Below, in pieces: positions 2,633 through 35,854 of a DNA stretch of 38,954 nucleotides. Under the pieces are notes generated by a model. The model was not told the origin of the DNA. It was given only the letters and a program-made list of their open reading frames with translations, and searched no databases. Every line of letters starts with the position of its first letter. The stretch's first letter is position 1. The DNA lies in the NCBI RefSeq assembly GCF_006345805.1, contig NW_021835227.1:1-38954 (forward strand), written 5' to 3'. Both the position numbers and the translations under genes were made by a program. This DNA is from Octopus sinensis (taxonomy: Eukaryota).

Positions 2633-3085
2633 ATTATATATAAAAAAGAAATACTCACATTAAGCTGTTATCGCTGTAAGAAAAACAATGAAATTCCAGT
2701 ATCAAATATAGTTGTATATCACATAATAATAATTTTTCTGAAAGTCACATTGCCTGTAATGTTGGGGGAGGGACTAGGCATTTACATCGGCCTCTACTCC
2801 TCTGGTAGTTGTGTAATCTACCAAGAGAGAATACAAAGTCAAATTCCATCTCTGGGGAATTTTAACCCGAAATGTTAAGACGAATGAAATGTCGTTAATC
2901 ATTTTGTCCTTCGCAGTAACGATTCAACATGCTCATTGACGTATGTAGCAAATATATCGTAAATGATATGACACTGTACTTACAGTAAGAAAAGCCTATA
3001 GTAATGGCAATAATTCTAATGCGAGCGAGATTAAGAATGATAACATAGCAGTGTCAATGATATTCTAATCCTTTCTACTGTATTT

Positions 3086-12923: not shown

Positions 12924-13374
12924 AATAAAAAACTGTTTCAATTTGAAAAATACAGAATACGTCATAATATGCACATATACCCAATTTTTATCTTTTTGCA
13001 TATTTCACTTCACGATTACATCACTGTACATAAATCCCTTCACTAAACAAGGTTTTCGAAACTTGTCTATGTCTGTGCACATATATATTCTCCGCATTAC
13101 CGAAAGCTGAACAGTTATCACTCTTACCAACAAAAATAACAATAATAGCGATAACGAATTACATCCCTGTATTCATCTACTTTTGAATTTCATCACACAC
13201 AACATGAACAAAATTTCTTCTTAAGAAAAAATACATATTCAAATAAGTAAAATATATGTTCATGAATAGCGATAGCGAATCCGGTCGATAGATTAAAAAT
13301 TATATTAAAACTATGCAATTGTGCGTATTTTCCTTATTTAATTTCTTATATATATATATATGCATGTATATACA

Positions 13375-13408
<34 letters not shown>

Positions 13409-13429
13409 ATATATTATATATATATATAT

Positions 13430-13461
<32 letters not shown>

Positions 13462-13710
13462 CATACATACGTACATATATACCATATATATGCATACATA
13501 CGTACATATATATGTATATGTATATATATATATCTAATTATGCATATATATACACACACACATATATATATATATATATATCTATATTGTATAGAGGGCA
13601 TTAATACACTTAATGCCTCACACTAAGAGGGACAAAGTAATTACTACCGAAATTACACTAATCATACCTAAATGGAGTTCTTCAAAGCAAGACATTTAAA
13701 AAATTAATTT

Positions 13711-13768
13711 AGTTCTGTATCACCGTGATTTCACATTTAACTTACGTCTTATGATCCTCAGCAAAACT
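13711..13768 (-). ncRNA. Hammerhead ribozyme-like motif (left arm)
   Basis: Exact reverse complement of 13959-14016. Confidence 0.55.
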
Positions 13769-13958
13769 GATAAGAAGTTATCCTTAATTGTTAATTTTAT
13801 TCCGAAATACTTTTCCCATCCGACATGCAGTTCGAAAAAGCCCGCCATTTACCGAATATATGATTTATAAACATCCCATGTGCTTGGCCGGAGTGAATAG
13901 ATGTCTGTTCGTCTTCGCTAGGTAAGGTTGGTGGTTTATTTATGATGTGTTCAGAATC

Positions 13959-14016
13959 AGTTTTGCTGAGGATCATAAGACGTAAGTTAAATGTGAAATC
14001 ACGGTGATACAGAACT
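13959..14016 (+). ncRNA. Hammerhead ribozyme-like motif (right arm)
   Basis: AGTTTTG-CTGAGGA-TCATAAGAC(GTAA)GTTAAATGT-GAAA-TCACGGTGA-TA-CAGAACT. Intact core, 7-bp stem I, palindromic stem III, eroded stem II. Confidence 0.55.
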
Positions 14017-14391
14017 AAATTCATTTTTTAAATGTCTTGCTTTGAAGAACTGCATTTAGGTATTATTAGTGTAATTTTGGTAGTAATGACTTTGTCCCTC
14101 TTAGTGTGAGACATTTATGTGTATTAATGCCCTCTATACAATATAGATATAATTAATTTGTTCAACATAAAAAAATTATTTTCGAATTCTTTTCTTTTAT
14201 GAGGTTTTCACGCTAACTACCTGATAATTTCTTGTTATGATTCCTTATTAAGAAGTTATCCTTAATTGTTAATTTTAATTATATATATATATATATATAT
14301 ACATACATACGTAAGTATATACCATATATATGCATACATACGTACATATATATGTATATGAATATATATATATATCTAATTATGCATATAT

Positions 14392-14463
<72 letters not shown>

Positions 14464-14480
14464 GCGTGTGGGTGTGTGTG

Positions 14481-14940
14481 TACGAGGGCTAATTATTGAG
14501 TATCTGGAATGTTGCCATGGTAACAAACTGAAACGCGAAAAGTGAAGTCACTTGGCCAAACTCTGCCTGCGAATAAATTTCTTATATTCTTACCATTTTC
14601 CGCGTTGTGCAGCAGTGCTTCCATGGCAGGTGTGTAACATGCGATCGTCGCCTTGCTAATGACAGAGTATCTGCATCATATTTAGGCAAAAGCTTGGCGA
14701 TATGTTCAAAAAAGTTTCATAGTTATCGATAGATTAAAGCAGATAATGTGATGATAATGATCTGAACTCAACCGTATATAATCTGGATAACTCGCGTATT
14801 GTAATTTTGTGATTTCTCCTCAAAGCTGTACGAATGGCTGCGATGTTTTTATCAGTACGGTTGGTTGCGGTTCTTCGAAAACGTTCCACATCATCGACAT
14901 TTTACGGCCATCTTGGAAACAATCCCACATTATATCAATT
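14481..14940 (+). mobile_element. Mariner remnant A, copy 1 (5' TIR, transposase start, inverted internal block)
   Basis: TA|CGAGGG terminus and ATGACAGAG start. The minus strand reads STDKNIAAIRTALRRNHKITIRELS. Confidence 0.75.
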
Positions 14941-15136
14941 CGACTATCAAACCCCACACAACATACATCCAAGTAGTGCAGTAAACAGCGGAGGTAAGCT
15001 AGAATGTAAACCTTAGTGCGGATGCACAGCAGTATTCAGGGACAATATGTACCTATCGGCTTTATTCTACGTTCTTTTGCTTCATTACTTTTGCATCATT
15101 CCGGATACAAATTCATCAGCCATTATATATATGCCG

Positions 15137-16615
15137 CAAATATCCATCAGGTAAAGAAAATGATCGCACATGCACTAGGAGCTAGTATAAGAGTTACTGT
15201 AAAAGGCCACACATTTAAATTTAATAATAAATATATGCACAGGACGAGGGGGGGGGCAGCCATCGGTGTTAGTATCGCTGGTGATGTGGCCAACTTTTTC
15301 ATGGTATAGTGGAACAGAAGCTTAAAGAACGCCTACTGCAGAAATCCATACTCGTAAACATGTGCGCTCGCTATGTTGATGATATCAACATAGTAGTAAA
15401 AGCATCCCACAAGAGTAAGTTGATGATTGTTAATTAATAATAGAAACTATATATGGAGAGCATCCAGCAAATAGCTAACTCCATCCACAAGAGTATTAAA
15501 GTCACAATAGACTACCCAACTAAACACCCCAACCATAGACTACCAGTACTAGACACTGAACTCTGGCTAGAAATTGTGAAAAATAAAACCCAAATCCTTC
15601 ATTCATACTATGCAAAACCTATGCCTCAAAATACCTGATCCACGGAACTCAGCCATTGCGGCAATGCCAAATTCAATATTTTGATGGCAGACCTTGTCAG
15701 AATAATGAGAAATGTGCACGATGTGCGAGCCTACAGAATTAAAGAGACACATACAGTATTTCATTCACCACATGCAGTTCTCAGGTTACAGCCATAAAGA
15801 AAGGATCAGAGTATACAAAGGAGCCATGAAGAAATTTGATAATATATTATGTAATGATAGGAATGGGATTTGCCCAGTCTATAGGAACAAGTCATGGAAC
15901 ACTATAGAAAGGACAAAAAAGAAAATAGGGAAGGCCAACTCTTGGTATGATAGCCATAAATACCTGAGTGTCATGTTCGTTGACACCACCCCGGAGGTGA
16001 ACTGGCGTACCGCTTAGAAGGACCCTAGATAAACTTAAACTAAGAATTAGGTTGTTGAAAAGCCAGGCAACCCTCCTATCAAATCTATAATCGGTAGAAC
16101 CTATCCTTTTAGTAGAACCCTCTGTACAGGTAATTATTGCACTGTATGTAGATTTAGCCCACAAACAAAATGTAAAGCCAGAAATGTAGTCTATAGTATA
16201 AGATGTATAGAGGGACGATGCAGTAACAAGACAGTAACATACGTAGGGGAAACAGCAGAAGATAGAGAGCGAGAAGGGGAGAATGAACATTGGAGACAAC
16301 TCAAGGAGGTAAAAGCTCATCGATTCTGTACCAACACGCCGAACAGGAACATGGGGATCAATCAATAACATAGATTAAGATATTGTCCACACATAGAACA
16401 GATGCAACATTTAGACAAATTACAGAAGCTACACATATAATAGAAAATAAACCTAGCCTGAATAGAAAACGAGAATGGAGCAATAGCACACACCACAACA
16501 TATGACGATAGAGGATTCCAAAACATAATAAATACACAGATAAATAAACAAATATAAATTAATAACTATATATATGTATATATATATTTGTATGTATATG
16601 TATGTATATATATAT

Positions 16616-16648
<33 letters not shown>

Positions 16649-16650
16649 CG

Positions 16651-16689
<39 letters not shown>

Positions 16690-17270
16690 ATGTGTATGTA
16701 TGTGTGTATATTGTCTATATATATTTTTTTTTTCGGTTAGATTTATTATTATTATTACTAATATTGTTGTTATACATACATACAAGCATATGTAATGATA
16801 ATAATGGGTGGATGTAAACACGGGAACAAAATTAGAACAAAAGCAACAACAACAAAATCAAAATACAAATTACATGAATGTATATAAACAGAAGATACAA
16901 ATATTACAGGCATCCCCCACACACACACACTAAATTAGCATAGACGCACATAGAGATATGAGCATGCGCAAATGAAGACACACAATATATATATGAAGAC
17001 ACACAAAATGGCCGACGGTTAGTAAGGAGAGACACAAATAAGTGAGAAGAAACAAAGGACCACTGATGCGGTCACAGGAGTGTAACGAAAGAAATCTGGC
17101 CGAAATAAGATTATGATTAATGTAAAAAATAAATATCAAATAACACCAAAAATAACACCAAATATATAGTACGTGTGTTTTTATTGGCTAAACTGGCAAT
17201 ATGATCATTCCGAAATATAACAATATCTGTTTCAACAAACGACTTCACATAAAAAATATGGGAACAACAA
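15137..17270 (+). mobile_element. Decayed, 5'-truncated Penelope-like element (RT plus C-terminal GIY-YIG), Neptune-like
   Basis: GGAAIGVSIAGDVANFFM (~15247), RYVDDI (15369-15386), DYP...RLPVLD (~15510-15555), C-X4-C-X2-C linker CTGNYCTVC (16123-16149), NVVYSIRC...YVGET (16186-16254) and [19 protein letters not shown] (~16413-16469). The 3' boundary is approximate. Confidence 0.9.
17057..17101 (+). ncRNA. Degenerate hammerhead-like motif in the 3' region of the PLE
   Basis: GGACCA-CTGATGCG-GTCAC(AGGA)GTGTAAC-GAAA-GAAATC-TGGCC. The core A9 is changed and the stems are eroded. Confidence 0.4.
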
Positions 17271-17278
17271 TATATAAC

Positions 17279-17320
<42 letters not shown>

Positions 17321-17383
17321 ATATTATATAATATATATATATATATATATGTCTATATATACATGTATGTGTTTGTGTGTGTT

Positions 17384-17830
17384 TACGAGGGCTGATTATT
17401 GAGTATCTGGGCTGTTGCCATGATAACAAACTGTAACGCGAAAAGTAAGTCACTTGGCCAAACTCCAGCACTTGCGCATAAAACTTTAGTATTCTAGCCA
17501 ATTTCCGCGTTGTGCAGCAGTGCTTCCATGGCATGTGTGTAACTTGCGATCATCGACTTGTAAATGACAGAGTATGTGAGCAAACAATCTGCATCAAAGC
17601 TTGGCGATTTGTGCAAAAAATATTCATAGTCATCGATAGATTAAAGCAGATAACGTGATGATAATGATCTGACTCAACCGATATAACCTGCATAACTCGG
17701 CGTATTGTGATTTTGTGATTTCCTCAAAGCTGTACGCATGGCGCGATATTTTTGTCAGTACTGTTGGTTGCGGTTCCCGCATATCGACATTTTTCGGCCA
17801 TCTTTGAAACAATCACACATTATATCAATT
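17384..17830 (+). mobile_element. Mariner remnant A, copy 2
   Basis: Paralogous to 19886-20349. Confidence 0.75.
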
Positions 17831-18113
17831 CGACTATCAAACGCCACCACACCTTAATCAAGTAGTGCTTAAACAGCGAGAGTAAGCTATAGTTTAACCT
17901 TAGTGCGCATACACAGCAGTATTCGGGTTCAATATGTTCCTATGGGCTTTATTCTAACTCTTTTGCTTCATACTTTTGCAACATTCCGGATACAAATTCA
18001 TCAGCCATCATATATATGCCGCCGAATAGAGAGAACTTGAAATACTCAGAATAGAAAACATGAATGAGTGGTGCAATCATTTCGAATTTAGTTTCATTGA
18101 GGTCTAGACTTAC

Positions 18114-18197
18114 AGGATCGAGAGCAGCGATAAGAGATAATCCAGATGAGCTGATATGGAGATAGTGACGCAGATAAGCATGCTTAGTCTTTATATA
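18114..18197 (-). promoter_or_regulatory. Candidate TATA box, initiator and 53-nt non-coding exon, copy 1
   Basis: TATATAAAG starts at 18197, GTCACT has its A at 18166 (31 nt downstream), and a GTAAGT donor lies at 18113-18108. Confidence 0.4.
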
Positions 18198-18255
18198 AAT
18201 ACATACAATAACACACATACACAATGACGCACTCGCACGCATGTATATATATATA

Positions 18256-18287
<32 letters not shown>

Positions 18288-18622
18288 TTGTGAGTGTGTG
18301 TATGTGTGCGTGCGTGTGTCTCCGTATGAGTCTGTGTCCATGCTTGTGTATATATATATCGAGAGGATCTCTTAATTTTTTAGAAGGATCGAGACCTGAA
18401 TATATGTCGTATATCACTGCGGATATTCATTTTCTTTTACTTAGAAACAAATGGGTAATGTGTTGCATCCTTCATATTTGGAACTGCAAATCTGTATATG
18501 TTAAAAACAAAATAATGTCCAACGTTTTGCTAAACAAATTTCAAACGTGGAACCAACGATTCACGGGTACATAGATGTTGCAAAGGAATATGACAATATC
18601 CATTGTAATGAGGTGTACATAC

Positions 18623-18766
18623 CGAAGATTTGGCGTAGTCCTATGGTACTTGTTACCTCGTCTTGCAGAATTGTTTTGGTGTCATTTTGAATCTCCTCCG
18701 CTGTAGTGGAATTCAGTGCATTACTGGCATTAAAGAAAAAAAGGTCGTACATTTTATCCATCATTG
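18623..18766 (-). CDS. Candidate coding exon MMDKMYDLFFFNASNALNSTTAEEIQNDTKTILQDEVTST..., copy 1 (144 nt)
   Basis: TGTAG|CA ATG ATG G...CG|GTATGT. Stop-free. It has a 1-nt deletion near the 3' end relative to copies 3-5. Confidence 0.35.
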
Positions 18767-18974
18767 CTACAGACACCAGCAGCATAATTAAACAATAATT
18801 GCTTTAAACAAAGTATAGATGGTAGATTGTAATTAGCATTGGCAATGATTAGTCACGTACAAAATATAAAACTTAAGTATTTAGAGCAGCAAATATCAAA
18901 ACCCCACTTTAAAAATTCGTTCAATTTCTATGGATATCGGAAAATTCCATTCATAATCTTCCTTACAAGTGGTG

Positions 18975-19381
18975 CTATCAACGCGTTATGTACCTAGGTT
19001 TTAACATCATATACTTCGAGTCACCTTGCTCAGACACACACTGATCCCAGGGTCTCTGCCACTTTTGGAATTCGACCTGGAATACGTCGTCCGTACGTGT
19101 CGAGGACCTTCTGCTATTAACTGTGAATCTCGACAACGGTTTTGAAACGGTGATCTTTGTTCTACTTTTCATTGATGTGAATTGATGGAAGCTCGAAGGA
19201 GATAAATCTTACAAATGGCATTGTTGAAACAGCGATAACATTTTAGTTTTGACCAGAAACTCACGAGACAGATGTGGTGAAAAATACAATTCTTTGCACT
19301 GCAAAACACGGTCGATTTCGCCGAATGTCCTATTTCAAAACATCGCAATCGCACCCTCTATTAACAGTTTGGATCAAGGTA
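18975..19381 (-). mobile_element. Mariner remnant B, transposase C-terminus, copy 1
   Basis: DDVFQVEFQKWQRPWDQCVSEQGD and HSAKS motifs across broken frames. Confidence 0.8.
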
Positions 19382-19646
19382 TCCGTTATCACCTTTACCA
19401 ACAAAAATAACAATAATAGCGATAACCAATTACATCACTGTACTCTCTACTTGTGAAGACATTCACTCGTGAATTTCACCAAACACAACATGGACAAAAT
19501 TTCTTCTGAAGAAAATACATATTCAAATAAGTAAAACATAATATCTTGAATAGCGATAGCGAAACTTGTCGATATATAAAAATTATAATAAAACTATGTA
19601 ATGTGCGTATTTTCCTTTTTTATTTCTCATACATATATATCTATAT

Positions 19647-19703
<57 letters not shown>

Positions 19704-19749
19704 TAGTATATATATTTATATATATATATGTATCTATATACATATATCG

Positions 19750-19794
<45 letters not shown>

Positions 19795-19830
19795 ATATAT
19801 ATATATTTATGCATATGCATATATACACAA

Positions 19831-19863
<33 letters not shown>

Positions 19864-19885
19864 AATGTACATGTGTATGTGTATT

Positions 19886-20349
19886 TACGAGGGCTGATTA
19901 TTGAGTATCTGGGCTGTTGCCATGGTAAGAAACTGTAACGCGAAAGTGAAGCCATTTGGGAAAACTCTACTGCGCGCGCATACATTTTAGTATTCTAGCA
20001 CAATTTCCGCGTTGTGCAGCAGTTCTTCCATGGCATGTGTGTAACTTGCGATCGCCGTCTTGTAAATGACAGAGTATGTTGAGCAAACAATCTGCATCAA
20101 AGCTTGGCGATTTGTGCAAAAAATGTTCATAGTCATCGATAGATTAAAGCAGATAACGTGATGATAATGAACTGAACTCACCGTATATAATCTGGATAAC
20201 TCACGTATTGTAATTTTGTGATTTCTCCTCAAAGCTGTACGAATGTCTGCGATATTTTTATCAGTACTGTTGGTTGCGGTTCTTCGATAACGTTCCACAA
20301 TATCGACATTTTACGGCCATTTTGGAAACAATCACACATTATATCAATT
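19886..20349 (+). mobile_element. Mariner remnant A, copy 3
   Basis: TA|CGAGGG. The plus strand from ATG 20066 reads MTEYVEQTICIK (mariner M..EQR.CIK). The minus strand reads FQNGR..NVDIVER..TATNSTDKNIADIRTALRRNHKITIRELS. Confidence 0.8.
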
Positions 20350-20637
20350 GGACTATCAAACACCACACAACATACATCCAAGTAGTGCAGGAAACAGCGG
20401 AAGTAAGCCAGAACGAAAACCTTAGTGCGGATGCACAGCATAATTCAGGGACAATATGTTCCTATCGGCTTTATTCTAAGTTCTTTTGCTTCATTACTTT
20501 TGCAACATTCCGGATACAAATTCATCAGCCATCATATATATGCCGTCGAATGGAGAGAACTTGAAATACTCACAATAGAAAACATGAATGAGTGGTGCAA
20601 TCATTTCGAATTTAACTTAATGGAGGTCTAGACTTAC

Positions 20638-20720
20638 AGGATCGAGGGCAGCTATAAGAGAAATCCAGATGAGCTGATATGGAGATAGTGACGCAGACGA
20701 GCATGCTTAGTCTTTATATA
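20638..20720 (-). promoter_or_regulatory. Candidate TATA-Inr-52-nt mini-exon, copy 2
   Basis: TATA at 20720, Inr A at 20689, GTAAGT at 20637-20632. Confidence 0.4.
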
Positions 20721-21121
20721 AGTATATACAGCAACACACATACACAAATACGCACTCACACGCATATATATATATATATATATTTGTGAGTGTGTGTATG
20801 TGTGCGTGCATGTGTCTCCGTATGAGTGTGTGTACATGCTTGTGTATATATATCGAGAGGATCTCTTAATTTTTAGAAGGGATCGAGATCTGAAGATATG
20901 TCGTATATCACTGCGGATATTCATTTTCTTTTACATTAGAAACAAATGGGTGATGTGTTGCACCCTTCATAATTTGGAATTGCAAATACTGTATATATTA
21001 AAAACAAAATAATGCCTAACGTTTTGCTAAGCAAATTTGAAACGTGGAAACAACGTTTCACGGGTACATAGATGTTGCAAAGGGAATATGACAATATCCA
21101 TTGTAAATGAGGCGTACATAC

Positions 21122-21265
21122 CGAAGCTTGGAGTTGTCCTTATGGTATTTGTTACCTCATTTTGCAGAATTGATTTGGTGTCATTTTGAAGCTCCTCCGC
21201 TGTAGTTGAATTCAGTGCATTACTGGCATTAAGGAAAAAAAGGTCATACATTTTATCCATCATTA
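21122..21265 (-). CDS. Candidate MMDK exon, copy 2 (144 nt)
   Basis: TTCTGTAG|TA ATG ATG...CG|GTATGT. It has a different 1-nt deletion (CCAAG versus CCAAAG). Confidence 0.35.
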
Positions 21266-21477
21266 CTACAGAACACACCAGCATCATATTAACAATAATT
21301 GCTTTAAACACAGTATAGATGGTAGATTGTATTTAGCATTGACAATGATTAGTCACGTACAAAATAAAAAACTTAAGTATTTAGAGCAGCAAATATCAAA
21401 ACCCCATCTTAAAAATTCGTTCAATTCCTATGGATATCGGAAAAATTCATATATAATTTTCCTTACAAGTGGTGCTA

Positions 21478-21878
21478 TCAATGCGTTATGTACCTAGGTT
21501 TTAACATCATATACTTTGAGTCACCTTGCGCAGAAATACACTGATCCCAGCGTTCCTGCCACATTTGGAATTCGACCTGGAATACGTCGTCCGTACGTGT
21601 CGAGGACCTTCTGCTATTAATTGTGAATCTCGACAACGGTTTTGAAACGATGATCTTTGTTCTACTTTTCCGAAGTTATTGGATGGAAGATCGAAGGAGA
21701 TAAATCTTCCAAATGGCATTGGTGCAGCAGCGATAACATTTTGGTTTTGGCGAGAACAACAGGTCAGATGTGGTGAAAAATCCATTTCTTTGCACTCCAA
21801 AAACACGGTCGATTTTGCCGAATGTTCTATTTCAAAACATCGCAATCGAACCCTCGATCAACAGTTTGGATCAAGGTA
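21478..21878 (-). mobile_element. Mariner remnant B C-terminus, copy 2
   Basis: Paralogue of 28975-29383. Confidence 0.8.
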
Positions 21879-22172
21879 TCCGTTATCACCCTTACCAACA
21901 AAAATAACAATAATAGCGATAACCAATTACATCCACGCATTATCTACGTGATAAGACATTCACTCGTGAATTTCACCACAGACAACATGGACAAAATTTC
22001 TTCTGAAGAAAATATACATATTCAAATAAGTAAAACATAATATCATGAATAGCGATAGCGAAACTTGTCGATATATGAAAAATTATAATAAATCTATGTA
22101 ATTATGCGTGTTTTCATTTTTTTAATTTCTGATATATATATATATATATATATTTGTATCTCTCTCTCTTAT

Positions 22173-22220
<48 letters not shown>

Positions 22221-22247
22221 GCATATGTATATAGGCAAACATACTAT

Positions 22248-22285
<38 letters not shown>

Positions 22286-22317
22286 ATATATATATAATGT
22301 ATGTGTTTGTGTGTGTT

Positions 22318-22771
22318 TACGAGGGCTGATTATTGAGTATCTGGCTGTTGCCATGGTAACCAACTGTAACGCGTAAAGTGAAGTCATTAGGCCAAACTCT
22401 ACTGTGCCTGCGCATAGAACTTTAGTTTTCTAGCCAATTTCCGCGTTGTGCAGCAGTTCTTCCATGGCATGTGTGTAACTTGCGATCGCCGCCTTGTAAA
22501 TGACAGAGTATGTTGAGCAAACAATCTGCATCAAAGCTTGGCGATATTTGCAAAAAATATTCATAGTTATCGATAGATTAAAGCAGATAATGTGATGATA
22601 ATAATCTGAACTCAACCGTATATAACCTGCATAACTCGCGTATTGTGATTTTGTGATTTCCCCTCAAAACTGTACGCATGGCTGCGATATTTTTGTCAGT
22701 ACTGTTGGTTGCGGTTCCCAGCATATCGACATTTTTCGGCCATCTTTGAAACAATCACACATTATATCAAT
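22318..22771 (+). mobile_element. Mariner remnant A, copy 4
   Basis: Paralogue, closest to copy 2. Confidence 0.75.
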
Positions 22772-23060
22772 TCGACTATCAAACCCCACACACCTTACAT
22801 CCAAGTAGTGCTGTAAACAGCGAGAGTAAGCTACAGTTTAAACCTTAGTGCGCATACACAGCAGTATTCGGGTTCAATATGTTCCTATGGGCTTTATTCT
22901 AACTTCTTTTGCTTCATTACTTTTGCAACATTCCGGATACAAATTCATCAGCCATCATATATATGCCGTCGAATGGAGAGAACTTGAAATACTCAGAATA
23001 GAAAACATGAATGAGTGGTGCAATCATTTCGAATTTAGTTTTATTGAGGTCTAGACTTAC

Positions 23061-23144
23061 AGGATCGAGAGCAGCGATAAGAGATAATCCAGATGAGCTG
23101 ATATGGAGATAGTGACACAGATAAGCATGCTTAGTCTTTATATA
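23061..23144 (-). promoter_or_regulatory. Candidate TATA-Inr-mini-exon, copy 3
   Basis: TATA at 23144, Inr A at 23113, GTAAGT at 23060-23055. Confidence 0.4.
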
Positions 23145-23187
23145 AATACATACAATAACACATATACACAATGACGCACTCGCACGC

Positions 23188-23234
<47 letters not shown>

Positions 23235-23550
23235 ATATTGTGAGTGTGTGTATGTGTGCGTGCGTGTGTCTCCGTATGAGTGTGTGTCCATGCTTGTGTA
23301 TATATATATCGAGAGGATCTCTTAATTTTTAGATGGGATCGAGACATGAATATATGTCGTACATCACTGCGGATATTCATTTTCTTTTGCATCCTTCAGT
23401 ATTTGGAACTGCAAATACTGTATATGTTAAAAACAAAATAATGTCCAACGTTTTGCTAACCAAATTTCAAACGTGGAAACAACGATTCACGGGTACATAG
23501 ATGCTGCAAAGGGAATATGACAATATCCATTGTAAATGAGGTGTACATAC

Positions 23551-23695
23551 CGAAGATTTGGCGTAGTCCTTATGGTACTTGTTACCTCATCTTGGAGAAT
23601 TGTTTTGGTGTCATTTTGAATCTCCTCCGCTGTAGTGGAATTCAGTGCATTACTGGCATTAAGGGAAAAAAGGTCGTACATTGTATCCATCATTG
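23551..23695 (-). CDS. Candidate MMDK exon, copy 3 (145 nt; MMDTMYDLFSLNASNALNSTTAEEIQNDTKTILQDEVTSTIRTTPNL)
   Basis: AG acceptor, ATGATGG, 47 open codons, CG|GTATGT donor. Confidence 0.4.
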
Positions 23696-23904
23696 CTACA
23701 GACACCAGCAGCATAATTAAACAATAATTGCTTTAAACAAAGTATAGGTGGTAGATTGTAATTAGCATTGACAATGATTAGTCACGTACAAAATATAAAA
23801 CTTAAGTATTTAGAGAAGCAAATATCAAAACCCCACTTTAAAAATTCGTTCAATTTCTATGGATATCGGAAAAATCCATTCATAATTTTCCTTACAAGTG
23901 GTGC

Positions 23905-24310
23905 TATCAACGCGTTATGTACCTAGGTTTTAACATCATATACTTCGAGTCACCTTGCGCAGACACACACTGATCCCAGCGTCTCTGCCACTTTTGGAAT
24001 TCGACATGGAATACGTCGTCCGTACGTATCGAGGACCTTCTGCTATTAATTGTGAATCTCGACAACGGTTTTGAAACGGTGATCTTTGTTCTACTTTTCA
24101 TCGATGTGAATTGATGGAAGCTCGAAGGAGATAAATCTTACAAATGGCATTGTTGAAACAGCGATAACATTTTAGTTTTGACCAGAAACTAACGAGACAG
24201 ATGTGGTGAAAAATACAATTCTTTGCACTCCAAAACACGGTCAATTTCGCCGAATGTCCTATTTCAAAACATTGCAATCGAACCCTCTATTAACAGTTTG
24301 GTTCAAAGTA
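23905..24310 (-). mobile_element. Mariner remnant B C-terminus, copy 3
   Basis: DDVFHVEFQKWQRRWDQCVSAQGD. Confidence 0.8.
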
Positions 24311-24654
24311 TCCGTTATCACCCTTACCAACAAAAATTAAAATAATAGCGATAACCAATTACATCACTGTACTTCTCTACTTGTGAAGACATTCACTCGT
24401 GAATTTCACCAAACACAACATGGACAAAATTTCTTCTGAAGAAAAAATACATATTCAAATAAGTAAAACATAATATCTTGAATAGCGATAGCGAAACTTG
24501 TCGATATAATAAAAATTATAATAAAACTATGTAATTGTGCGTATTTTCCTTTTTAATTTCTCATACATATATTATATATATATATATATATATAAATATA
24601 TATGTATGTATTAGTATATATATTTATATATATATGTATCTATATACTATATCG

Positions 24655-24686
<32 letters not shown>

Positions 24687-24721
24687 AATATATATATTTA
24701 TGCATATGCATATATACACAA

Positions 24722-24758
<37 letters not shown>

Positions 24759-24763
<5 letters not shown>

Positions 24764-24913
24764 TATTCGAGACAAAACCACTATTTTGCAAAACAAACAA
24801 GGAAAGACTTAATTAATACATAAATTTTAATAAATAGTAAAAAAACCGCCACTACAATCGTTTCTTGTCTTGATCGACAATCTTCAGGTGGACTTCCAAT
24901 AATTCAGTGTCAA
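24759..24913 (-). mobile_element. ~155-bp insertion in a (TA)n tract, probable PLE terminal fragment
   Basis: Absent from the paralogous site at ~19835-19865. Flanked by TA runs and carries a hammerhead. Confidence 0.75.
24849..24891 (-). ncRNA. Minimal type I hammerhead ribozyme motif
   Basis: CCAC-CTGAAGA-TTGTC(GATCAA)GACAA-GAAA-C(GATT)G-TA-GTGG. Intact core, 4-bp stem I, 5-bp stem II, GUA triplet. Confidence 0.75.
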
Positions 24914-24950
24914 ATATATATATATATAAATGTACATGTGTATGTGTATT

Positions 24951-25418
24951 TACGAGGGCTGATTATTGTGTATCTGGGCTGTTGCCATGGTAACAAACTG
25001 TAACGCGAAAAGTGAAGCCATTTGGGAAAACTCTACTGCGCCTGCGCATAAAATTTTAGTATTCTAGCCAATTTCCGCGTTGTGCAGCAGTTCTTCCATG
25101 GCATGTGTGTAACTTGCGATCGCCGTCTTGTAAATGACAGAGTATGTTGAGCAAACAATCTGCATCAAATCTTGGCGATTTGTGCAAAAAATGTTCATAG
25201 TCATCGATAGATTAAAGCAGATAATGTGATGATAATGAACTGAACTCAACCGTATATAATCTGGATAACTCACGTATTGTAATTTTGTGATTTCTCCTCA
25301 AAGCTGTACGAATGTCTGCGATGTTTTTATCAGTACTGTTGGTTGCGGATCTTCGAAAACGTTCCACAATATCGACATTTTACGGCCATTTTGGAAACAA
25401 TCACACATTATATCAATT
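24951..25418 (+). mobile_element. Mariner remnant A, copy 5
   Basis: Paralogue, closest to copy 3. Confidence 0.75.
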
Positions 25419-25706
25419 GGACTATCAAACACCACACAACATACATCCAAGTAGTGCAGTAAACAGCGGAAGTAAGCCAGAACGAAAACCTTAGTGCGGA
25501 TGCACAGCATAATTCAGGGACAATATGTTCCTATCGGCTTTATTTTAAGTTCTTTTGCTTCATTACTTTTGCAACATTCCGGATACAAATTCATCAGCCA
25601 TCATATATATGCCGTCGAATGGAGAGAACTTGAAATACTCACAATAGAAAACATGAATGAGTGGTGCAATCATTTCGAATTTAACTTAATGGAGGTCTAG
25701 ACTTAC

Positions 25707-25790
25707 AAGATCGAGGGCAGCTATAAGAGATAATCCAGATGAGCTGATATGGAGATAGTGACGCAGAGGAGCATGCTTAGTCTTTATATA
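25707..25790 (-). promoter_or_regulatory. Candidate TATA-Inr-mini-exon, copy 4
   Basis: TATA at 25790, Inr A at 25759, GTAAGT at 25706-25701. Confidence 0.4.
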
Positions 25791-25833
25791 AGTACATACA
25801 GCAACACACATACACAATGACGCACCCACACGC

Positions 25834-25869
<36 letters not shown>

Positions 25870-26207
25870 TTGTGAGTGTGTGTATGTGTGCGTGCGTGTG
25901 TCTCCGTATGAGTGTGTGTCCATGCTTGTGTATATATATCGAGAGGATCTCTTAAATTTTAGAAGTGATCGAAACCTGAAGTTATGTCGTATATCACTGC
26001 GGATATTCATTTTCTTTTACATTAAAAACAAATGGGTAATGTGTTGCATCCTTCAGTATTTGGAATTGCAAATACTGTATATATTAAAAACAAAATAATG
26101 CCCAACGGTTTGCTAAACAAATTTCAAACGTGGAAACAACGATTCACGGGTACATAGATGTTGCAAAGGGAATATGACAATATCCATTGTAAATGAGGCG
26201 TACATAC

Positions 26208-26352
26208 CGAAGCTTTGGAGTTGTCCTTATGGTATTTGTTACCTCATTTTGCAGAATTGATTTGGTGTCATTTTGAAGCTCCTCCGCTGTAGTTGAATTC
26301 AGTGCATTACTGGCATTAAGGAAAAAAAGGTCATACATTTTATCCATCATTG
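26208..26352 (-). CDS. Candidate MMDK exon, copy 4 (145 nt; MMDKMYDLFFLNASNALNSTTAEELQNDTKSILQNEVTNTIRTTPKL)
   Basis: AG acceptor, ATGATGG, 47 open codons, CG|GTATGT donor. Confidence 0.4.
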
Positions 26353-26561
26353 CTACAGACACCAGCAGCATAATTAAACAATAATTGCTTTAAACAAAGT
26401 ATAGATGGTAGATTGTATTTAGCATTGACAATGATTAGTCACGTACAAAATATAAAACTTAAGTATTTAGAGCAGCAAATATCAAAACCCCATCTTAAAA
26501 ATTCGTTCAATTCCTATGGATATCGGAAAAATTCATACATAATTTTCCTTACAAGTGGTGC

Positions 26562-26968
26562 TATCAATGCGTTATGTACCTAGGTTTTAACATCATATAC
26601 TTTGAGTCACCTTGCGCAGAAATACACTGATCCCAGCGTTCCTGCCACATTTGGAATTCGACCTGGAATACGTCGTCCGTACGTGTCGAGGACCTTCTGC
26701 TATTAATTGTGAATCTCGACAACGGTTTTGAAACGATGATCTTTGTTCTACTTTTTATCGAAGTTATTGGATGGAAGATCGAAGGAGATAAATCTTCCAA
26801 ATGGCATTGGTGCAGCAGCGATAACATTTTGGTTTTGGCGAGAAACTAACAGGTCAGATGTGGTGAAAAATCCATTTCTTTGCACTCCAAAAACACGGTC
26901 GATTTTGCCGAATGTCCTATTTCAAAACATCGCAATCGAACCCTCGATTAACAGTTTGGATCAAGGTA
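26562..26968 (-). mobile_element. Mariner remnant B C-terminus, copy 4
   Basis: HQCHLEDLSPSIF and DDVFQVEFQMWQERWDQCISAQGD. Confidence 0.8.
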
Positions 26969-27216
26969 TCCGTTATCACCCTTACCAACAAAAATAACAA
27001 TAATAGCGATAACCAATTACATCCATGTATTTATCTACGTGATAAGACATTCACTCGTGAATTTCACCACAGACAACATGGACAAAATTTCTTTGAAGAA
27101 AATATACATATTCAAATAAGTAAAACATAATATCATGAATAGCGATAGCGAAACTTGTCGATATATGAAAAATTATAATAAATCTATGTAATTATGCGTG
27201 TTTTCATTTTTTAATT

Positions 27217-27254
<38 letters not shown>

Positions 27255-27270
27255 ATCTCTCTCTCTCTAT

Positions 27271-27322
<52 letters not shown>

Positions 27323-27342
27323 GCATATGTATATATAGACAA

Positions 27343-27374
<32 letters not shown>

Positions 27375-27405
27375 CTATATATAAATGTATGTGTTTGTGT
27401 GTGTT

Positions 27406-27872
27406 TACGAGGGCTGATTATTGAGTATCTGGGCTGTTGCCATGGTAACCAACTGTAACGCGTAAAGTGACGTCATTAGGCCAAACTCTACTGCGCCTGC
27501 GCATAGAACTTTTGTTTTCTAGCCAATTTCCGCGTTGTGCAGCAGTTCTTCCATGGCATGTGTGTAACTTGCGATCGCCGTCTTGTAAATGACAGAGTAT
27601 GTTGAGCAAACAATCTGCATCAAATCTTGGCGATATTTAGTAAAAATGTTCATAGTTATCGATAGATTAAAGCAGATAATGTGATGATAATGATCTGAAC
27701 TCAACCGTATATTACCTGCATAACTTGCGTATTGTGCTTTTGTGATTTCCCCTCAAAGATGTACGCATGGCTGCGATATTTTTGTCAGTACTCTTGGTTG
27801 CGGTTCTCAGAAAACATTGCACAATATCGACATTTTTCGGCCATCTTTGAAACAATCACACATTATATCAAT
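27406..27872 (+). mobile_element. Mariner remnant A, copy 6
   Basis: Paralogue with its own diagnostic variants. Confidence 0.75.
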
Positions 27873-28161
27873 TCGACTATCAAACGTCACACACCTTACA
27901 TCCAAGTAGTGTTGTAAACAGCGGGAGTAAGCTAGAGTCTAAACCTTAGTGCTCATGCACAGCAGTATTCGGGGTCAATATGTTCCTATCGGCTTTATTC
28001 TAAGTTCTTTTGCTTCATTACTTTTGCAACATTCCGGATACAAATTCATCAGCCATCATATATATGACGTCGAATGGCGAGAACTTGAAATACTCACAAT
28101 AGAAAACATGAATGAGTGGTCCAATCATTTCGAATTTACCTTAATGGAGGTCTAGACTTAC

Positions 28162-28244
28162 AGGATGGAGGGCTGCTATAAGAGAAATCCAGATAAGCTG
28201 ATATGGAGATAGTGACGCAGACGAGCATGCTTAGTCTTTATATA
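28162..28244 (-). promoter_or_regulatory. Candidate TATA-Inr-mini-exon, copy 5
   Basis: TATA at 28244, Inr A at 28213, GTAAGT at 28161-28156. Confidence 0.4.
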
Positions 28245-28641
28245 AGTACATACAGCAACACACATACACAAATACGCACTCACACGCATATATATATATA
28301 TACATTTGTGAGTGTGTGTATGTATGCGTGCGTGCGTCTCGTATGAGTGTGTTTCCACGCTTGTGTATATATATCGAGAGGTTCTTCTAATTTTTAGAAA
28401 GAATGGAGACCTGAATATATGTCGTATAACACTATGGAAATTAATTTCTTTTTCATTAGTAACAAATGGGTGATGTGTTGCATCCTTCAGTATTTGGAAT
28501 TGCAAATACTGTATATATTAAAAACACAATAATACCCAACATGTTGCTAAACAAATTTCAAACGTGGAAACAACGATTCACGGGTACATAGATGTTGCAA
28601 AGGGAATATGACAATATCCATTGTAAATGAGGCGTACATAC

Positions 28642-28786
28642 CGAAGCTTTGGAGTTGTCGTTATGGTACTTGTTACCTCATGTTGCAGAATTGTTTTGGT
28701 GTCATTTTGAATCTCCTCCGCTGTAGTGGAATTCAGTGCATTACTGGTATTGAGGAAAAAAAGTTCATACATTTTATCCATCATTG
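28642..28786 (-). CDS. Candidate MMDK exon, copy 5 (145 nt; MMDKMYELFFLNTSNALNSTTAEEIQNDTKTILQHEVTSTITTTPKL)
   Basis: GCTGTAG|CA ATG ATG G, 47 open codons, CG|GTATGT donor. Confidence 0.4.
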
Positions 28787-28974
28787 CTACAGCAGCATAA
28801 TTAAACAATAATTGCTTTAAACGAAGTATAGATGATAGATTGTAAATAGCATTGACAATGATTAGTCACGTACAAAATATAAAACTTAAGTCTTTAGAAC
28901 AGCAAATATCAAAACCCCCTTTACAAAATTCGTTTAATTTCTATGGATAATGTAAAATTTCATACATAATTGCT

Positions 28975-29797
28975 ATCAACACGTTATGTTCCTAGGTTTT
29001 AACAGCATATACTTCTAGTTACCTTGCGCAGAATATACACTGTTCCCAGCGTCCCTGCTCCTTTTGGAATTCGGCCTGGATTTCGTCGTCCCTACGTGTA
29101 TCGAGGACCTTCTGCTATTAACTGTGAATCTCGACAACGGTTTTGAAACGGTGATCTTTGTTCTATTTTCATAGAATTGAAGGGATGAAAGCCCGAAGGA
29201 GATAAATCTTGCAAATAGGACTGGTGAAAAAACGATAACAGATTCGTTTTCGCGAGAAACTCATAGGTGAGATATGGTGAAAAATCCAATCCTTTGCACT
29301 GCACAGACACGCTCGATTTCGCTGAATGTCCTCCCTTCAAATCATCGCAGTCGAACCCTCGCTTAACAGTTTGGATGAAGGTAGGCTAGATCAAATCTCA
29401 TTGCACAGTAACACATTTCCAGCTGTGATACTTGCGGTAGGTTTTTTTAGAAGGTTAATTGTCTTCCAGGGATGTTTCCCCGCTTTTGTACAGCACGTCA
29501 CATTTGAAATATTGCGTAAAACACATTGCTTGGTGGCTGTAAGCTTGCCGAATAATGTGCAATCTCTCTGAAGCAGAATTGTCAAGTTTAATACAAGATT
29601 TCACGTAGGCTCTTTGTTCCGTATTCCTTCCCATGGCAGAATCGCAGACTACTGCATATACGCGACCGCATAAGGACAAAGTTCAGACGTCGGGAAGTAA
29701 ACACTGTGATGTTATACGGTACGTTGGTTCATGATGGTCACTTCACCCTGCTGGCGCGTAGACAGCTACTCCGTGGATATTTTCATACAACCTCATA
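28975..29797 (-). mobile_element. Mariner remnant B with 5' TIR, HTH N-terminus and C-terminus (internally deleted)
   Basis: TIR-like TA|TGAGGTTGTATGAAAATATCC at 29797. MGRNTEQRAYVKSCIKLDNSASERLHIIRQAYS...KSGETSLED is joined at ~29390 to FLAKTNLLSFFHQSYLQDLSPSGF (third catalytic Asp region). Confidence 0.85.
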
Positions 29798-31436: not shown

Positions 31437-31439
<3 letters not shown>

Positions 31440-31523
<84 letters not shown>

Positions 31524-31601
31524 GTATATATGTATATATATATATTATATATATATATATATTATTATATATATATATATATATGTATAATAATGTATAT
31601 A

Positions 31602-31644
<43 letters not shown>

Positions 31645-31669
31645 TATATATGTATATATATATATGTAT

Positions 31670-31701
<32 letters not shown>

Positions 31702-31789
31702 ATATATATATATATATATGGGTGTATGTGTGTGTGTGTGTGTGTAGAACAAATTTAGGCAAAATTCAATTTGTACTAAATATATATAC

Positions 31790-31826
<37 letters not shown>

Positions 31827-31857
31827 GTACAAATTGAATCTTGCCTAAAGTTGTTCT

Positions 31858-31926
<69 letters not shown>

Positions 31927-31935
31927 TATATATAC

Positions 31936-31987
<52 letters not shown>

Positions 31988-31997
31988 GTATATATAT

Positions 31998-32050
<53 letters not shown>
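31440..32050. repeat. Large compound (TA)n/(TG)n/(CA)n tract with an internal palindrome
   Basis: Direct reading. Inverted 37-bp arms at 31744-31780 and 31823-31859. Confidence 0.95.
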
Positions 32051-32051
<1 letters not shown>

Positions 32052-33384: not shown

Positions 33385-33555
33385 TCAGGATACATTCAGT
33401 AATTTTGGTCCATGAAATTTTATGAAACGCACAGCATTACCCTTCTCAATAGGCTTGGATTTTGTGTTCCAAATTTCATTATGATCGGTGCAGTCAGTTT
33501 CGAATGTATAAGTAACACTCGAACACATAAAGACATTAACTTTGATATAATAGAT
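33385..33555 (-). mobile_element. Helitron-like non-autonomous 5' end remnant
   Basis: The minus strand starts A|TCTATTATATCAAAGTTAATGTCTTTATGTG, a style seen in microsatellite-bearing non-autonomous Helitrons. Resemblance only. Confidence 0.35.
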
Positions 33556-33624
33556 ATAAATGAGCATTATACATACATCTATATATATGTATATATTATA
33601 TCTGTGTGTGTGTGTGTGTGCTTT

Positions 33625-33664
<40 letters not shown>

Positions 33665-34038: not shown

Positions 34039-34099
34039 TATGTATGTGTGTCCGTGTATGTATAAGTGTAATAGTTTCACTTTAATAGTTTCGGTATTA

Positions 34100-34488: not shown

Positions 34489-34532
<44 letters not shown>

Positions 34533-35804
34533 GAAAACATACATAAATACACGTATATGTGTACGCTTGTCTGTGTTGGTAAGTATAAGTTTATGACGAT
34601 AAAAATATGTCGTAAAACGTAAAACCCTGATGAAAAGTTTTGTTATAAGAAGCAAACTGAAACTTTTCTCTCTCCCTAAAATGTAAACTTATGTATTTGA
34701 TATGTTTGTGAAAAGATATTAAAAAGTTAATAATGCGTTTAGAATAAAATGAAGATGTGATTGAGTTAAAATTTTGTCAGTATGAGATTTTCAATATGTA
34801 GAACAATAAATTAAAGGCATTGGTTGCAACAAGTACAGAAATCAATGTGTATACTATCAAGTGTATTTATTTCTGCATAAGTTCTACTCAAAATATACGA
34901 ATTTTCTTCGAAAAGGCAATAAAATTAGTAGTCGTTATATATGTGCCATAAAAGGACGAATTAAACATTTGTGCTAACCAGACTTTGATTAATAAGAAAG
35001 CATGTCACACAAATGTTAACTTCGTATAATTAGAAATTACGCAATAGATTTGAAATATTTACGGTAGAAGGTTTTGAAGTATATAATTTGATGAAGTCTT
35101 CAAATTTTGCAATATAATTCTAACAGACTTATCTAAAACTATATTTATCTTGGCTTTATTTATTCACTCATGAGATTCAGGATGTACAAAACAATTACTA
35201 CAGGAAATTTCAGATCTCCTGAGTTAATATTTTCTCGACATGTGTAGATATATAAAACAATAATCTCCGTAATAATATTTATATCGAATGCATTAAAACA
35301 TTTTATATCAAATGGGAACATTTTATATCAAATATAAAAAAAATATCATAGTTTACTTACATAAGAGAAACGGAGAGAATGAGCACGAAAATTATATTTC
35401 GCATACTTTTTTATATTTCTCGTTTTTCAGCAATTCAAATTTCAAATATCTCAATCAGATTTCTTCATGAAATCCCAATGCTTGTCAAAGTGGAGCAGAA
35501 GGACTTATGGGTATTTAGTAATAAGAAACAGCTCAAATATCATTCATGTAATATACATAAAATGACTAATAATCGTTATGCTTCGGTGTCGAACAAAGGC
35601 TTTAAATCAAATGGATCTCAATGACGCTGCATGATAATTGTTGTAAACTTGAAATCCTGTATCGTAGTGCACATACCTATGCACATAGACACACACATAC
35701 ATATACACAGAGGAAAAACCCACACAAGTTGGTCGAGGAAGTTAAGCGTATGGAGCTGCTTGCAATGTATATCTGATATCGATTGCATCGATAACTAGCT
35801 ACTG

Positions 35805-35807
<3 letters not shown>

Positions 35808-35854
<47 letters not shown>

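What the first reader, a model, noticed from the sequence alone, without database searches (positions are those of the whole stretch)
18108..28786. Tandem cluster of candidate promoter/mini-exon/first-coding-exon cassettes (possible variable-N-terminus locus)
Seen: on the minus strand, four consecutive stretches read TATA-Inr, an ATG-free 52-53-nt exon, GTAAGT, ~1.8-2.0 kb of mariner/microsatellite DNA, AG|CA-ATGATGG, a 47-codon exon and GTATGT (28213->26352, 25759->23695, 23113->21265, 20689->18766). The second ATG has A at -3 and G at +4. The peptide variants differ (I/L, T/S, D/N/H, S/N). Known: clustered protocadherins and UGT1A use tandem promoter-plus-variable-exon cassettes spliced to shared exons. 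Inference: this may be a young alternative-first-exon cluster whose constant exons lie towards lower coordinates, outside the window or unrecognised. The unit ends imply that in the single-copy ancestor the coding exon lay upstream of this promoter, so duplication itself would have created the promoter-to-exon order.
Basis: partly seen in the sequence, partly recalled or inferred. Interest (0 to 1): 0.78.

Follow-up and report, generated by a model that had tools for sequence, protein, structure and literature searches.

The report
Tandemly duplicated internal exon in octopus gene
The repeated "cassettes" are five copies of a 2.5-kb intron segment carrying one 102-base internal exon of an already annotated, uncharacterised Octopus sinensis secreted-protein gene, so this is ordinary tandem exon duplication and not a cluster of promoters with alternative first exons.

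Summary
The repeat is real. A tandem array at 13114-29383 (minus-strand sense) has five full units of 2.43-2.66 kb and one truncated unit.

The window is Octopus sinensis contig VCDQ01000990.1. It carries the RefSeq gene LOC115231167 on the minus strand (CDS 35404 to 2655). The repeated ORF is that gene's exon 2:
- It is 102 nt long and in frame at both ends.
- It follows a shared signal-peptide exon 1 at 35404-35361.
- Constant exons 3-6 lie at 10614-2655.

NCBI isoforms X1-X4 join two or three of the copies in series. My exon coordinates reproduce X1 exactly, with GT-AG at every intron.

Two single-copy paralogous loci, one in O. sinensis and one in O. vulgaris, show the pre-duplication state.

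The TATA...GTAAGT combination is one occurrence copied five times. Chance predicts about 0.9 per window.

The oldest units differ by 9-15%, against 3.5% between the two species, so the array is not young.

Verdict: a known kind of event (tandem exon duplication giving an internal 34-residue repeat), low interest. No RNA data were available here.

The parts
13114..29383 (-). Tandem array of a ~2.5-kb segment. Units: U1 29383-26971, U2 26970-24313, U3 24312-21881, U4 21880-19384, U5 19383-~16900, and truncated U6 15137-13114. All junctions read ...GGTGATAAC+GGA+TACCTT...
   Evidence: Self-BLAST and repeat families. Unit alignment, 85-97% identity. Identical junctions with a 3-nt filler. A single copy of the unit in paralogue L001 13633-16207 and L002 26271-28780.
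35361..35404 (-). Exon 1 coding part of LOC115231167: ATG plus signal peptide MRNIIFVLILSVSL(I), donor AT|GTAAGT
   Evidence: tblastn of P0001. Exact peptide mapping. The spliced CDS equals isoform X1. The CDS start in the record is 35404.
28642..28743 (-). Exon 2 copy U1, 102 nt, intact. Acceptor ...CCTCAATACCAG|T, donor CG|GTATGT. Used in isoforms X1, X2 and X4.
26208..26309 (-). Exon 2 copy U2, 102 nt, intact. Used in X1, X2 and X3.
23551..23652 (-). Exon 2 copy U3, 102 nt, intact. Used in X1, X3 and X4.
21122..21222 (-). Exon 2 copy U4, 101 nt (1-nt deletion in an AAA run). Splice sites are intact. It is in no annotated isoform. Inclusion gives a stop 3 codons into exon 3.
18623..18723 (-). 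Exon 2 copy U5, 101 nt (1-nt deletion in AA). Splice sites are intact. It is in no annotated isoform. The same copy is intact in the twin contig L003.
10543..10614 (-). Exon 3 (constant), 72 nt
8716..8811 (-). Exon 4 (constant), 96 nt
7356..7490 (-). Exon 5 (constant), 135 nt
2655..2673 (-). Last annotated coding exon (DNSLM-stop). The TGA overlaps a GTGAGT donor that the paralogue models use, so the model is probably cut short by the contig end.
   Evidence: Downstream exons of P0005 map to L003 28461-36587, beyond the part of L003 that matches window position 1.
28156..28242 (-). TATA-like motif plus 'mini-exon' plus GTAAGT. Further copies at 25701-25788, 23055-23142, 20632-20718 and 18108-18195. 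It lies in the intron downstream of each exon 2 copy, at the edge of a degenerate (TG/TA)n tract. No evidence of function.
15138..17270 (+). Non-array DNA that replaces the exon-bearing first ~1.36 kb of unit U6. By eye it has reverse-transcriptase-like and GIY-YIG-like motifs (Penelope-like?), not confirmed by Pfam. It is also present in L003.

Best explanation
A ~2.5-kb piece of the gene LOC115231167 (Octopus sinensis, minus strand) was duplicated in tandem. The piece carried the gene's 102-nt exon 2.

How the array formed:
- There was one founding end-joining event. It left the same 3-nt filler, GGA, at every junction.
- Unequal crossing-over then expanded the array, including a two-unit 5-kb step, to six units.
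- Five units still carry the exon.

Why the copies can be spliced in series:
- The exon is a multiple of three in length and keeps the same phase at both ends.
- Every copy keeps the same acceptor and donor.
- So copies can be joined one after another between the shared signal-peptide exon 1 (35404-35361) and constant exons 3-6.

The product is a protein with one to several tandem 34-residue, N-glycosylation-rich repeats (NALNSTTAEEIQNDTKTILQ.EVT.TI.TTP.LR) directly after the signal peptide. NCBI's four isoforms are U1+U2+U3, U1+U2, U2+U3 and U1+U3.

The TATA-like motif, the 'mini-exon' and the upstream ATGATGG are intronic sequence copied passively with the unit.

Shown here: the array structure, the single-copy pre-duplication state, exon identity and phase, splice-site conservation, and identity with the RefSeq models.

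Inferred: that the copies are really spliced in series or as cassettes in vivo; that the protein is a secreted or type I membrane glycoprotein, as suggested by the signal peptide and by a relative's C-terminal transmembrane segment; and that the repeat number only lengthens or varies an N-terminal glycosylated spacer.
For: - The 48-aa peptide hits P0001 (E 2e-7). P0001 maps colinearly to the window minus strand as exon 1 (35404), the array exon, and exons at 10616, 8819 and 7489.
- P0003, P0006, P0007 and P0008 are LOC115231167 isoforms X4, X2, X1 and X3, on a contig of 38954 bp. That contig is the window reversed, CDS 35404-2655.
- The spliced CDS from my coordinates equals X1, with GT-AG at all introns and an exon 2 of 102 nt.
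- The isoforms hold 2-3 copies in series.
- Only one of the three frames of the 102-nt exon is open. It is open in all 8 copies and paralogues apart from the two 1-nt deletions.
- L001 and L002 hold one copy of the unit with colinear flanks.
- All junctions are identical.
- The motif combination is expected 0.91 times per window by chance.
- dN/dS is 0.46 against the paralogue (Fisher p = 0.02).
Against: - No RNA evidence could be reached. The isoforms are Gnomon models, and none of these proteins was found on any other contig.
- Exons are no better conserved than introns between the paralogues: 32/468 against 117/1686 mismatches.
- There is no homologue outside O. sinensis and O. vulgaris and no Pfam domain. 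The AlphaFold model is unusable, pLDDT 39. Protein-coding status is therefore only moderately supported.
The in-frame ATG was also seen in L003, and L003 carries the TATA-like motif. Lineage-specific use cannot be excluded.
- U4 and U5 have intact splice sites but shift the frame. Plain serial splicing would therefore give premature stops, unless those copies are skipped or the deletions are assembly errors.
Confidence: 0.8

Rival explanations
1. Each unit carries its own TATA/Inr promoter and a non-coding mini-exon. The mini-exon splices to the next unit's ATG-bearing first coding exon. This would give alternative N-termini joined to shared downstream exons, as in clustered protocadherins or UGT1A.
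For: All motifs are present in five copies. Constant exons do lie downstream.
Against: - A shared upstream exon 1 with a signal peptide, and a stronger acceptor 41 nt downstream, explain the annotated CDS exactly.
- The ATG frame is broken, and the mini-exon donor GT is absent, in both single-copy paralogues.
- The motif set is one independent occurrence, against 0.91 expected by chance.
- It is no better conserved than neighbouring DNA.
- The proposed N-terminus MMDKMYDLFFLNAS has no hydrophobic signal core, although the exon carries NxS/T sequons.
- In the ancestral order the TATA-like motif sits downstream of the exon, inside an intron.
Confidence: 0.04
2. Neutral or decaying duplication. 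The array is a passive segmental duplication inside an intron of a fast-evolving or barely functional orphan gene. The extra exon copies are included haphazardly, skipped, or trigger nonsense-mediated decay. The multi-repeat isoforms have no selected function.
For: - Substitutions among exon copies are about 12 non-synonymous to 7 synonymous, and there are two frame-shifting deletions.
- Exons are not more conserved than introns.
- Family membership is restricted to two Octopus species, with no domain and no confident fold.
- One unit has already been destroyed by an insertion.
Against: - The ORF of 155 codons and all splice sites are kept in four loci of two species, with dN/dS about 0.5 (p = 0.02).
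- Three, possibly five, copies keep exact length and phase after up to 10-15% divergence.
- The two deletions sit in A-runs of a long-read assembly, and one is absent from the twin contig.
Confidence: 0.15
3. Mis-assembly. The array is an artefact: falsely repeated copies of a single unit on an unplaced long-read contig.
For: The contig is unplaced. A near-identical contig, L003, ends inside the array.
Against: - Units differ by 2.8-15.6% and have a mosaic history, far more than read error would give.
- L003 independently contains the U4/U5 junction, the insert and U6.
Confidence: 0.01

Closest known systems
Tandem exon duplication that creates internal protein repeats. The closest analogue from my own knowledge is the LPA kringle-IV-2 array. 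The general phenomenon is reviewed in PMC9013439.
   Same: A genomic unit of a few kb containing exon(s) is repeated head to tail inside one gene. The copies keep length, phase and splice sites, and are spliced in series, so protein length scales with copy number. The array then expands by unequal crossing-over.
   Different: The unit holds a single 102-nt exon that encodes a 34-residue glycosylation-rich segment with no recognisable domain. There are only 5 copies. The gene is an orphan known only from two Octopus species. In vivo splicing has not been verified.
Variable-first-exon clusters (clustered protocadherins, UGT1A).
   Same: Tandem homologous exons lie upstream of shared constant exons and give variant N-terminal peptide segments.
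   Different: Here the copies are internal exons with functional acceptors, preceded by a shared signal-peptide exon. Several copies are joined in one transcript model. There is no evidence for a promoter in each unit.
Mutually exclusive exon clusters derived from tandem exon duplication (Dscam1 and others; PMC9013439, PMC6071210)
   Same: The origin is tandem duplication of an internal exon, and the copies have equal length and phase.
   Different: The annotated isoforms include two or three copies together. The exon length is a multiple of three and the introns are about 2.3 kb, so neither frame nor steric constraints enforce exclusivity. No docking/selector system was looked for.

Membership tests
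Variable-first-exon cluster (Pcdh/UGT1A type) | Each variable exon is a first exon carrying the start codon, and the signal peptide where the product is secretory | tested here: not met
A shared exon 1 at 35404-35361 carries the ATG and signal peptide.
Variable-first-exon cluster (Pcdh/UGT1A type) | Each variable exon has its own promoter | tested here: inconclusive
   Only a TATA-like motif exists. It is one independent occurrence against 0.91 expected by chance, it sits at the edge of a (TG/TA)n tract, and it already lies in the intron of the single-copy paralogues. Transcription starts cannot be tested with these tools.
Variable-first-exon cluster (Pcdh/UGT1A type) | One variable exon per transcript, spliced directly to the constant exons | tested here: not met
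   RefSeq isoforms X1-X4 hold 2-3 copies in series. These are models, not reads.
Variable-first-exon cluster (Pcdh/UGT1A type) | Shared constant exons downstream | tested here: met
   Exons 3-6 lie at 10614-2655. Further exons lie beyond the window end, as shown by L003.
Tandem exon duplication / internal repeat expansion | Adjacent homologous exons of equal length and phase within one gene | tested here: met
   There are five copies. Three are 102 nt and two are 101 nt. All share the same phase, acceptor and donor.
Tandem exon duplication / internal repeat expansion | Exon length is a multiple of three, so serial inclusion keeps the frame | tested here: met
   102 nt. Exon 1 plus U1, U2, U3 and exons 3-6 translates to the 223-aa isoform X1. 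Skipping all copies also stays in frame.
Tandem exon duplication / internal repeat expansion | A single-copy state exists in relatives | tested here: met
   L001 (O. sinensis chromosome) and L002 25530-36946 (O. vulgaris) have one unit with colinear flanks.
Tandem exon duplication / internal repeat expansion | Transcripts that contain the duplicated exons | not testable with these tools
   Only Gnomon protein models are available. No transcript contigs were found for any isoform.
Mutually exclusive exon cluster | Exactly one exon of the cluster in every mature mRNA | tested here: not met
   All four annotated isoforms carry two or three copies. This is model-based.
   No Pfam hit. No PDB hit. 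No protein-database hit. No terminal inverted repeats were found. Only a by-eye resemblance remains.

The most novel reading that the evidence does not exclude
The array is a working diversification device in a lineage-restricted octopus secreted or membrane glycoprotein family. The three to five near-identical cassette exons would be included combinatorially, possibly tissue-specifically. This would vary the number and sequence of N-glycosylated 34-residue modules at the mature N-terminus. The faster divergence of exons 2-3 than of their introns between paralogues would reflect positive selection. A weaker variant is that the window lineage has additionally gained internal starts that yield isoforms without a signal peptide.
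Probability: 0.1. Interest if true: 0.45.

Novelty: new member of a known kind. Interest (0 to 1): 0.22.

Why it matters
The finding corrects a tempting but wrong reading. Motif cassettes that recur with a duplication are not independent evidence for promoters.

It also documents a clean example of how a protein gains an internal repeat:
- the pre-duplication state is preserved in a paralogue;
- the founding junction is identifiable;
- later expansion by unequal crossing-over can be traced.

Biologically it concerns an uncharacterised orphan gene family of Octopus. The impact is therefore small unless the repeat variation proves to be regulated or selected.

Tried and rejected
- The word-indexed protein search with the 48-aa peptide found nothing. 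The exhaustive HMMER search was needed.
- Pfam on transposon-like ORFs and on the gene family gave nothing except RVT_1 at 3-1109.
- Mariner identity was tested five ways and never confirmed.
- I considered that the duplication arose by recombination between two mariner-like copies flanking the unit. I rejected this. The lower flank (13113 downward) has no homologue of the upper element. The junction is a non-homologous join with a 3-nt filler.
- The AlphaFold2 model of isoform X1 had mean pLDDT 39, so I ran no fold search.
- Rfam and tRNA scans were empty. No paper mentions the three LOC identifiers.
- My own error, corrected: I attributed hits to L002 that belong to L003, because the file /data/L002.fa holds both records. 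The mismatch showed up and was fixed. The 97% match to window 20053-1 is therefore an O. sinensis contig, not O. vulgaris.
- The O. vulgaris locus fetched ends about 3.5 kb short of where its array would start, so the array's state in that species remains unknown.


Full report
**1. The observation**

The window is AT-rich eukaryotic DNA full of (TA)n tracts. Self-comparison shows a head-to-tail array from 13114 to 29383 with periods of 2423-2657 bp.

Read on the minus strand, the units are:
- U1 29383-26971
- U2 26970-24313
- U3 24312-21881
- U4 21880-19384
- U5 19383 to about 16900
- U6, a remnant at 15137-13114. Its first ~1.36 kb is replaced by unrelated DNA at 15138-17270.

The peptide variants are as described.

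Three qualifications apply:
- The recurrence follows from the duplication and is not independent evidence. TATAAA-N70-100-GTAAGT occurs only in these five copies, and 0.91 occurrences are expected per shuffled window.
- A sliding conservation profile across units shows the ORF and the TATA/donor region at 0.92-0.96. That is the same as several plainly non-coding stretches.

**2. What the ORF is**

The word-indexed search found nothing. An exhaustive HMMER search of the 48-residue peptide hit P0001 (E 2e-7, 71% identity). P0001 is an uncharacterised Octopus sinensis protein.

tblastn of P0001 against the window gave a colinear series on the minus strand:
- residues 1-13 at 35404-35366
- residues 16-49 on each array copy
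- residues 49-72 at 10616-10545
- residues 71-105 at 8819-8691
- residues 106-156 at 7489-7337

A search with P0001 returned four isoforms, X1-X4, of LOC115231167. They lie on a contig of exactly 38954 bp. The look-up of X1 shows that contig, VCDQ01000990.1, is the window reversed, with CDS from 35404 to 2655.

The exons in window coordinates, minus strand, are:

| Exon | Coordinates | Note |
|---|---|---|
| 1 | 35404-35361 | ATG and signal peptide |
| 2, copy U1 | 28743-28642 | 102 nt |
| 2, copy U2 | 26309-26208 | 102 nt |
| 2, copy U3 | 23652-23551 | 102 nt |
| 3 | 10614-10543 | constant |
| 4 | 8811-8716 | constant |
| 5 | 7490-7356 | constant |
| 6 | 2673-2655 | last annotated |

Joining these gives X1 residue for residue, with GT-AG at every intron.

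The isoforms combine the copies as follows:
- X1 is U1+U2+U3.
- X2 is U1+U2.
- X3 is U2+U3.
- X4 is U1+U3.

So the repeated ORF is an internal, in-frame exon.

**3. The pre-duplication state**

L001 is the O. sinensis chromosome CM016863.1 and encodes P0001. It is colinear with the window from about 35.8 kb to 1.9 kb but contains one unit only, at L001 13633-16207.

L002 is the O. vulgaris chromosome OX597818.1 and has the same single-copy paralogue at 25530-36946. About 25 kb further on it holds the orthologue of window 38954-34848 at 92.6-96.9% identity. The locus ends before the array would begin.

L003 is an O. sinensis contig. It matches window 20053-1 at 96.9%, or 0.9% substitutions in ungapped unit columns, and begins inside the array. 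It is probably the other haplotype.

All four internal junctions read ...GGTGATAAC + GGA + TACCTT.... The two single-copy flanks meet these ends exactly. This points to one founding non-homologous join followed by unequal crossing-over. A 3.4-kb stretch at offset 5065 is 94.9% identical, which indicates a two-unit step.

Inter-unit divergence is 2.8% for U2/U4 and 8.5-15.6% for the other pairs. Divergence from the paralogue is 11-12%. Divergence between the two species is 3.5%. The oldest duplications therefore long predate the species split.

**4.

That frame then ends after 16 codons (MMDKMYDLFFLMPVMH*), while the 102-nt exon stays open in its annotated frame, and in that frame only.
- In both paralogues the "mini-exon" donor reads CTTTAAGT, not CTGTAAGT.
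- The TATA-like motif adjoins a degenerate (TG/TA)n tract. In the ancestral order it lies downstream of exon 2, inside the intron.
- Exon 1 supplies a classical signal peptide.

None of this excludes a lineage-specific gain in the window locus, where the ATG is in frame and GTAAGT is present in all units. Nothing requires such a gain either.

**5. Is it a working coding gene?**

The evidence is only moderate:
- The 155-codon frame and all splice sites are kept in four loci of two species.
- dN/dS against the paralogue is 0.46 (20.5 non-synonymous, 11.5 synonymous; Fisher p = 0.02).
- Exons as a whole are no better conserved than flanking intron: 32/468 against 117/1686 mismatches.
- Exons 2-3 are actually more diverged than their flanks: 19/174 against 31/597, p = 0.013.
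- There is no Pfam domain and no relative outside these two species.
- The AlphaFold model is unusable, pLDDT 39.

Relatives continue downstream of the window's last exon. One of them (P0004) ends in a hydrophobic segment followed by YHYRRK. The corresponding exons of the twin contig lie beyond window position 1. The window's gene model is therefore cut short by the contig end: its TGA overlaps a GTGAGT donor.

**6. Mechanism and caveats**

Most likely the array lengthens and varies a glycosylated N-terminal spacer by serial or cassette inclusion of exon 2 copies.

U4 and U5 keep perfect splice sites. If they are included, translation stops three codons into exon 3. Either they are skipped, or they cause unproductive splicing, or the two single-A deletions are long-read consensus errors. 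L003 has the U5 copy intact.

No RNA data could be reached, so in vivo splicing is inferred from the RefSeq models and from comparative evidence.

**7. Comparison and verdict**

This is tandem exon duplication, a well-described route to internal repeats and alternative splicing (PMC9013439). The closest analogue is serially spliced repeat arrays such as LPA kringle IV-2 (from my own knowledge). It fails the defining tests of a variable-first-exon cluster and of a mutually exclusive cluster.

The locus is already annotated, though uncharacterised. Interest is low.

Noticed in passing
window 3-1109 (+), continuing to about 1694: A reverse-transcriptase ORF fragment (Pfam RVT_1, E 4.9e-11) runs off the window start. 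It is probably a non-LTR retrotransposon. A related copy lies in L001 at 37790-38560 (87%).
   Followed up: partly
window 15138-17270 (+): About 2.1 kb of non-array DNA replaces the exon-bearing part of the sixth unit. By eye the ORFs show RT-like (..GGAAIGVSIAGDVANFFM..) and GIY-YIG-like (..VVYSIRC...YVGET..) motifs, suggesting a Penelope-like element. Pfam found nothing. It is also present in the twin contig L003 and absent from L001.
   Followed up: partly
window 13577-13771 and 13956-14151: A 196-bp inverted repeat, 96% identical, with arms about 185 bp apart. It is inserted in the truncated unit U6 and absent from the other units.
   Followed up: no
L003 3-19964 versus window 20053-1: A second unplaced O. 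sinensis contig, VCDQ01000984.1, carries the gene LOC115231142. It is a near-twin of the window: 0.9% substitutions in unit columns, 96.9% identity counting gaps. It starts inside the array. It is probably an uncollapsed haplotype, annotated as a separate partial gene.
   Followed up: partly
window exon 2 (28743-28642) and exon 3 (10614-10543) versus L001: These two exons are about twice as diverged from the paralogue as their flanking 150-bp intron stretches (19/174 against 31/597, Fisher p = 0.013). This may indicate fast or positively selected evolution of the N-terminal part. Exon 3 of the window differs from L001, L002 and L003 alike.
   Followed up: partly
window 2655-2673 (-): The annotated stop TGA overlaps a GTGAGT donor that the paralogue models use (DNSLI|PPLTS...). 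The remaining exons map beyond the window end in L003 (28461-36587). The RefSeq model of LOC115231167 is probably truncated at its 3' end by the contig end.
   Followed up: yes
window 37316-37581, 34148-34252: A 135-bp unit is repeated twice in tandem (79% matches), with a third related copy 3.1 kb away. It may be a short interspersed element. No Rfam or tRNA match was found.
   Followed up: no
window 5043-5272 and 6396-6638: An inverted pair of about 240 bp at 80% identity, in the intron between exons 5 and 6. Both arms end in the same ORF tail (...KEGQIFLVN / ...KEDQIFLVN), suggesting two copies of one repeat family.
   Followed up: no
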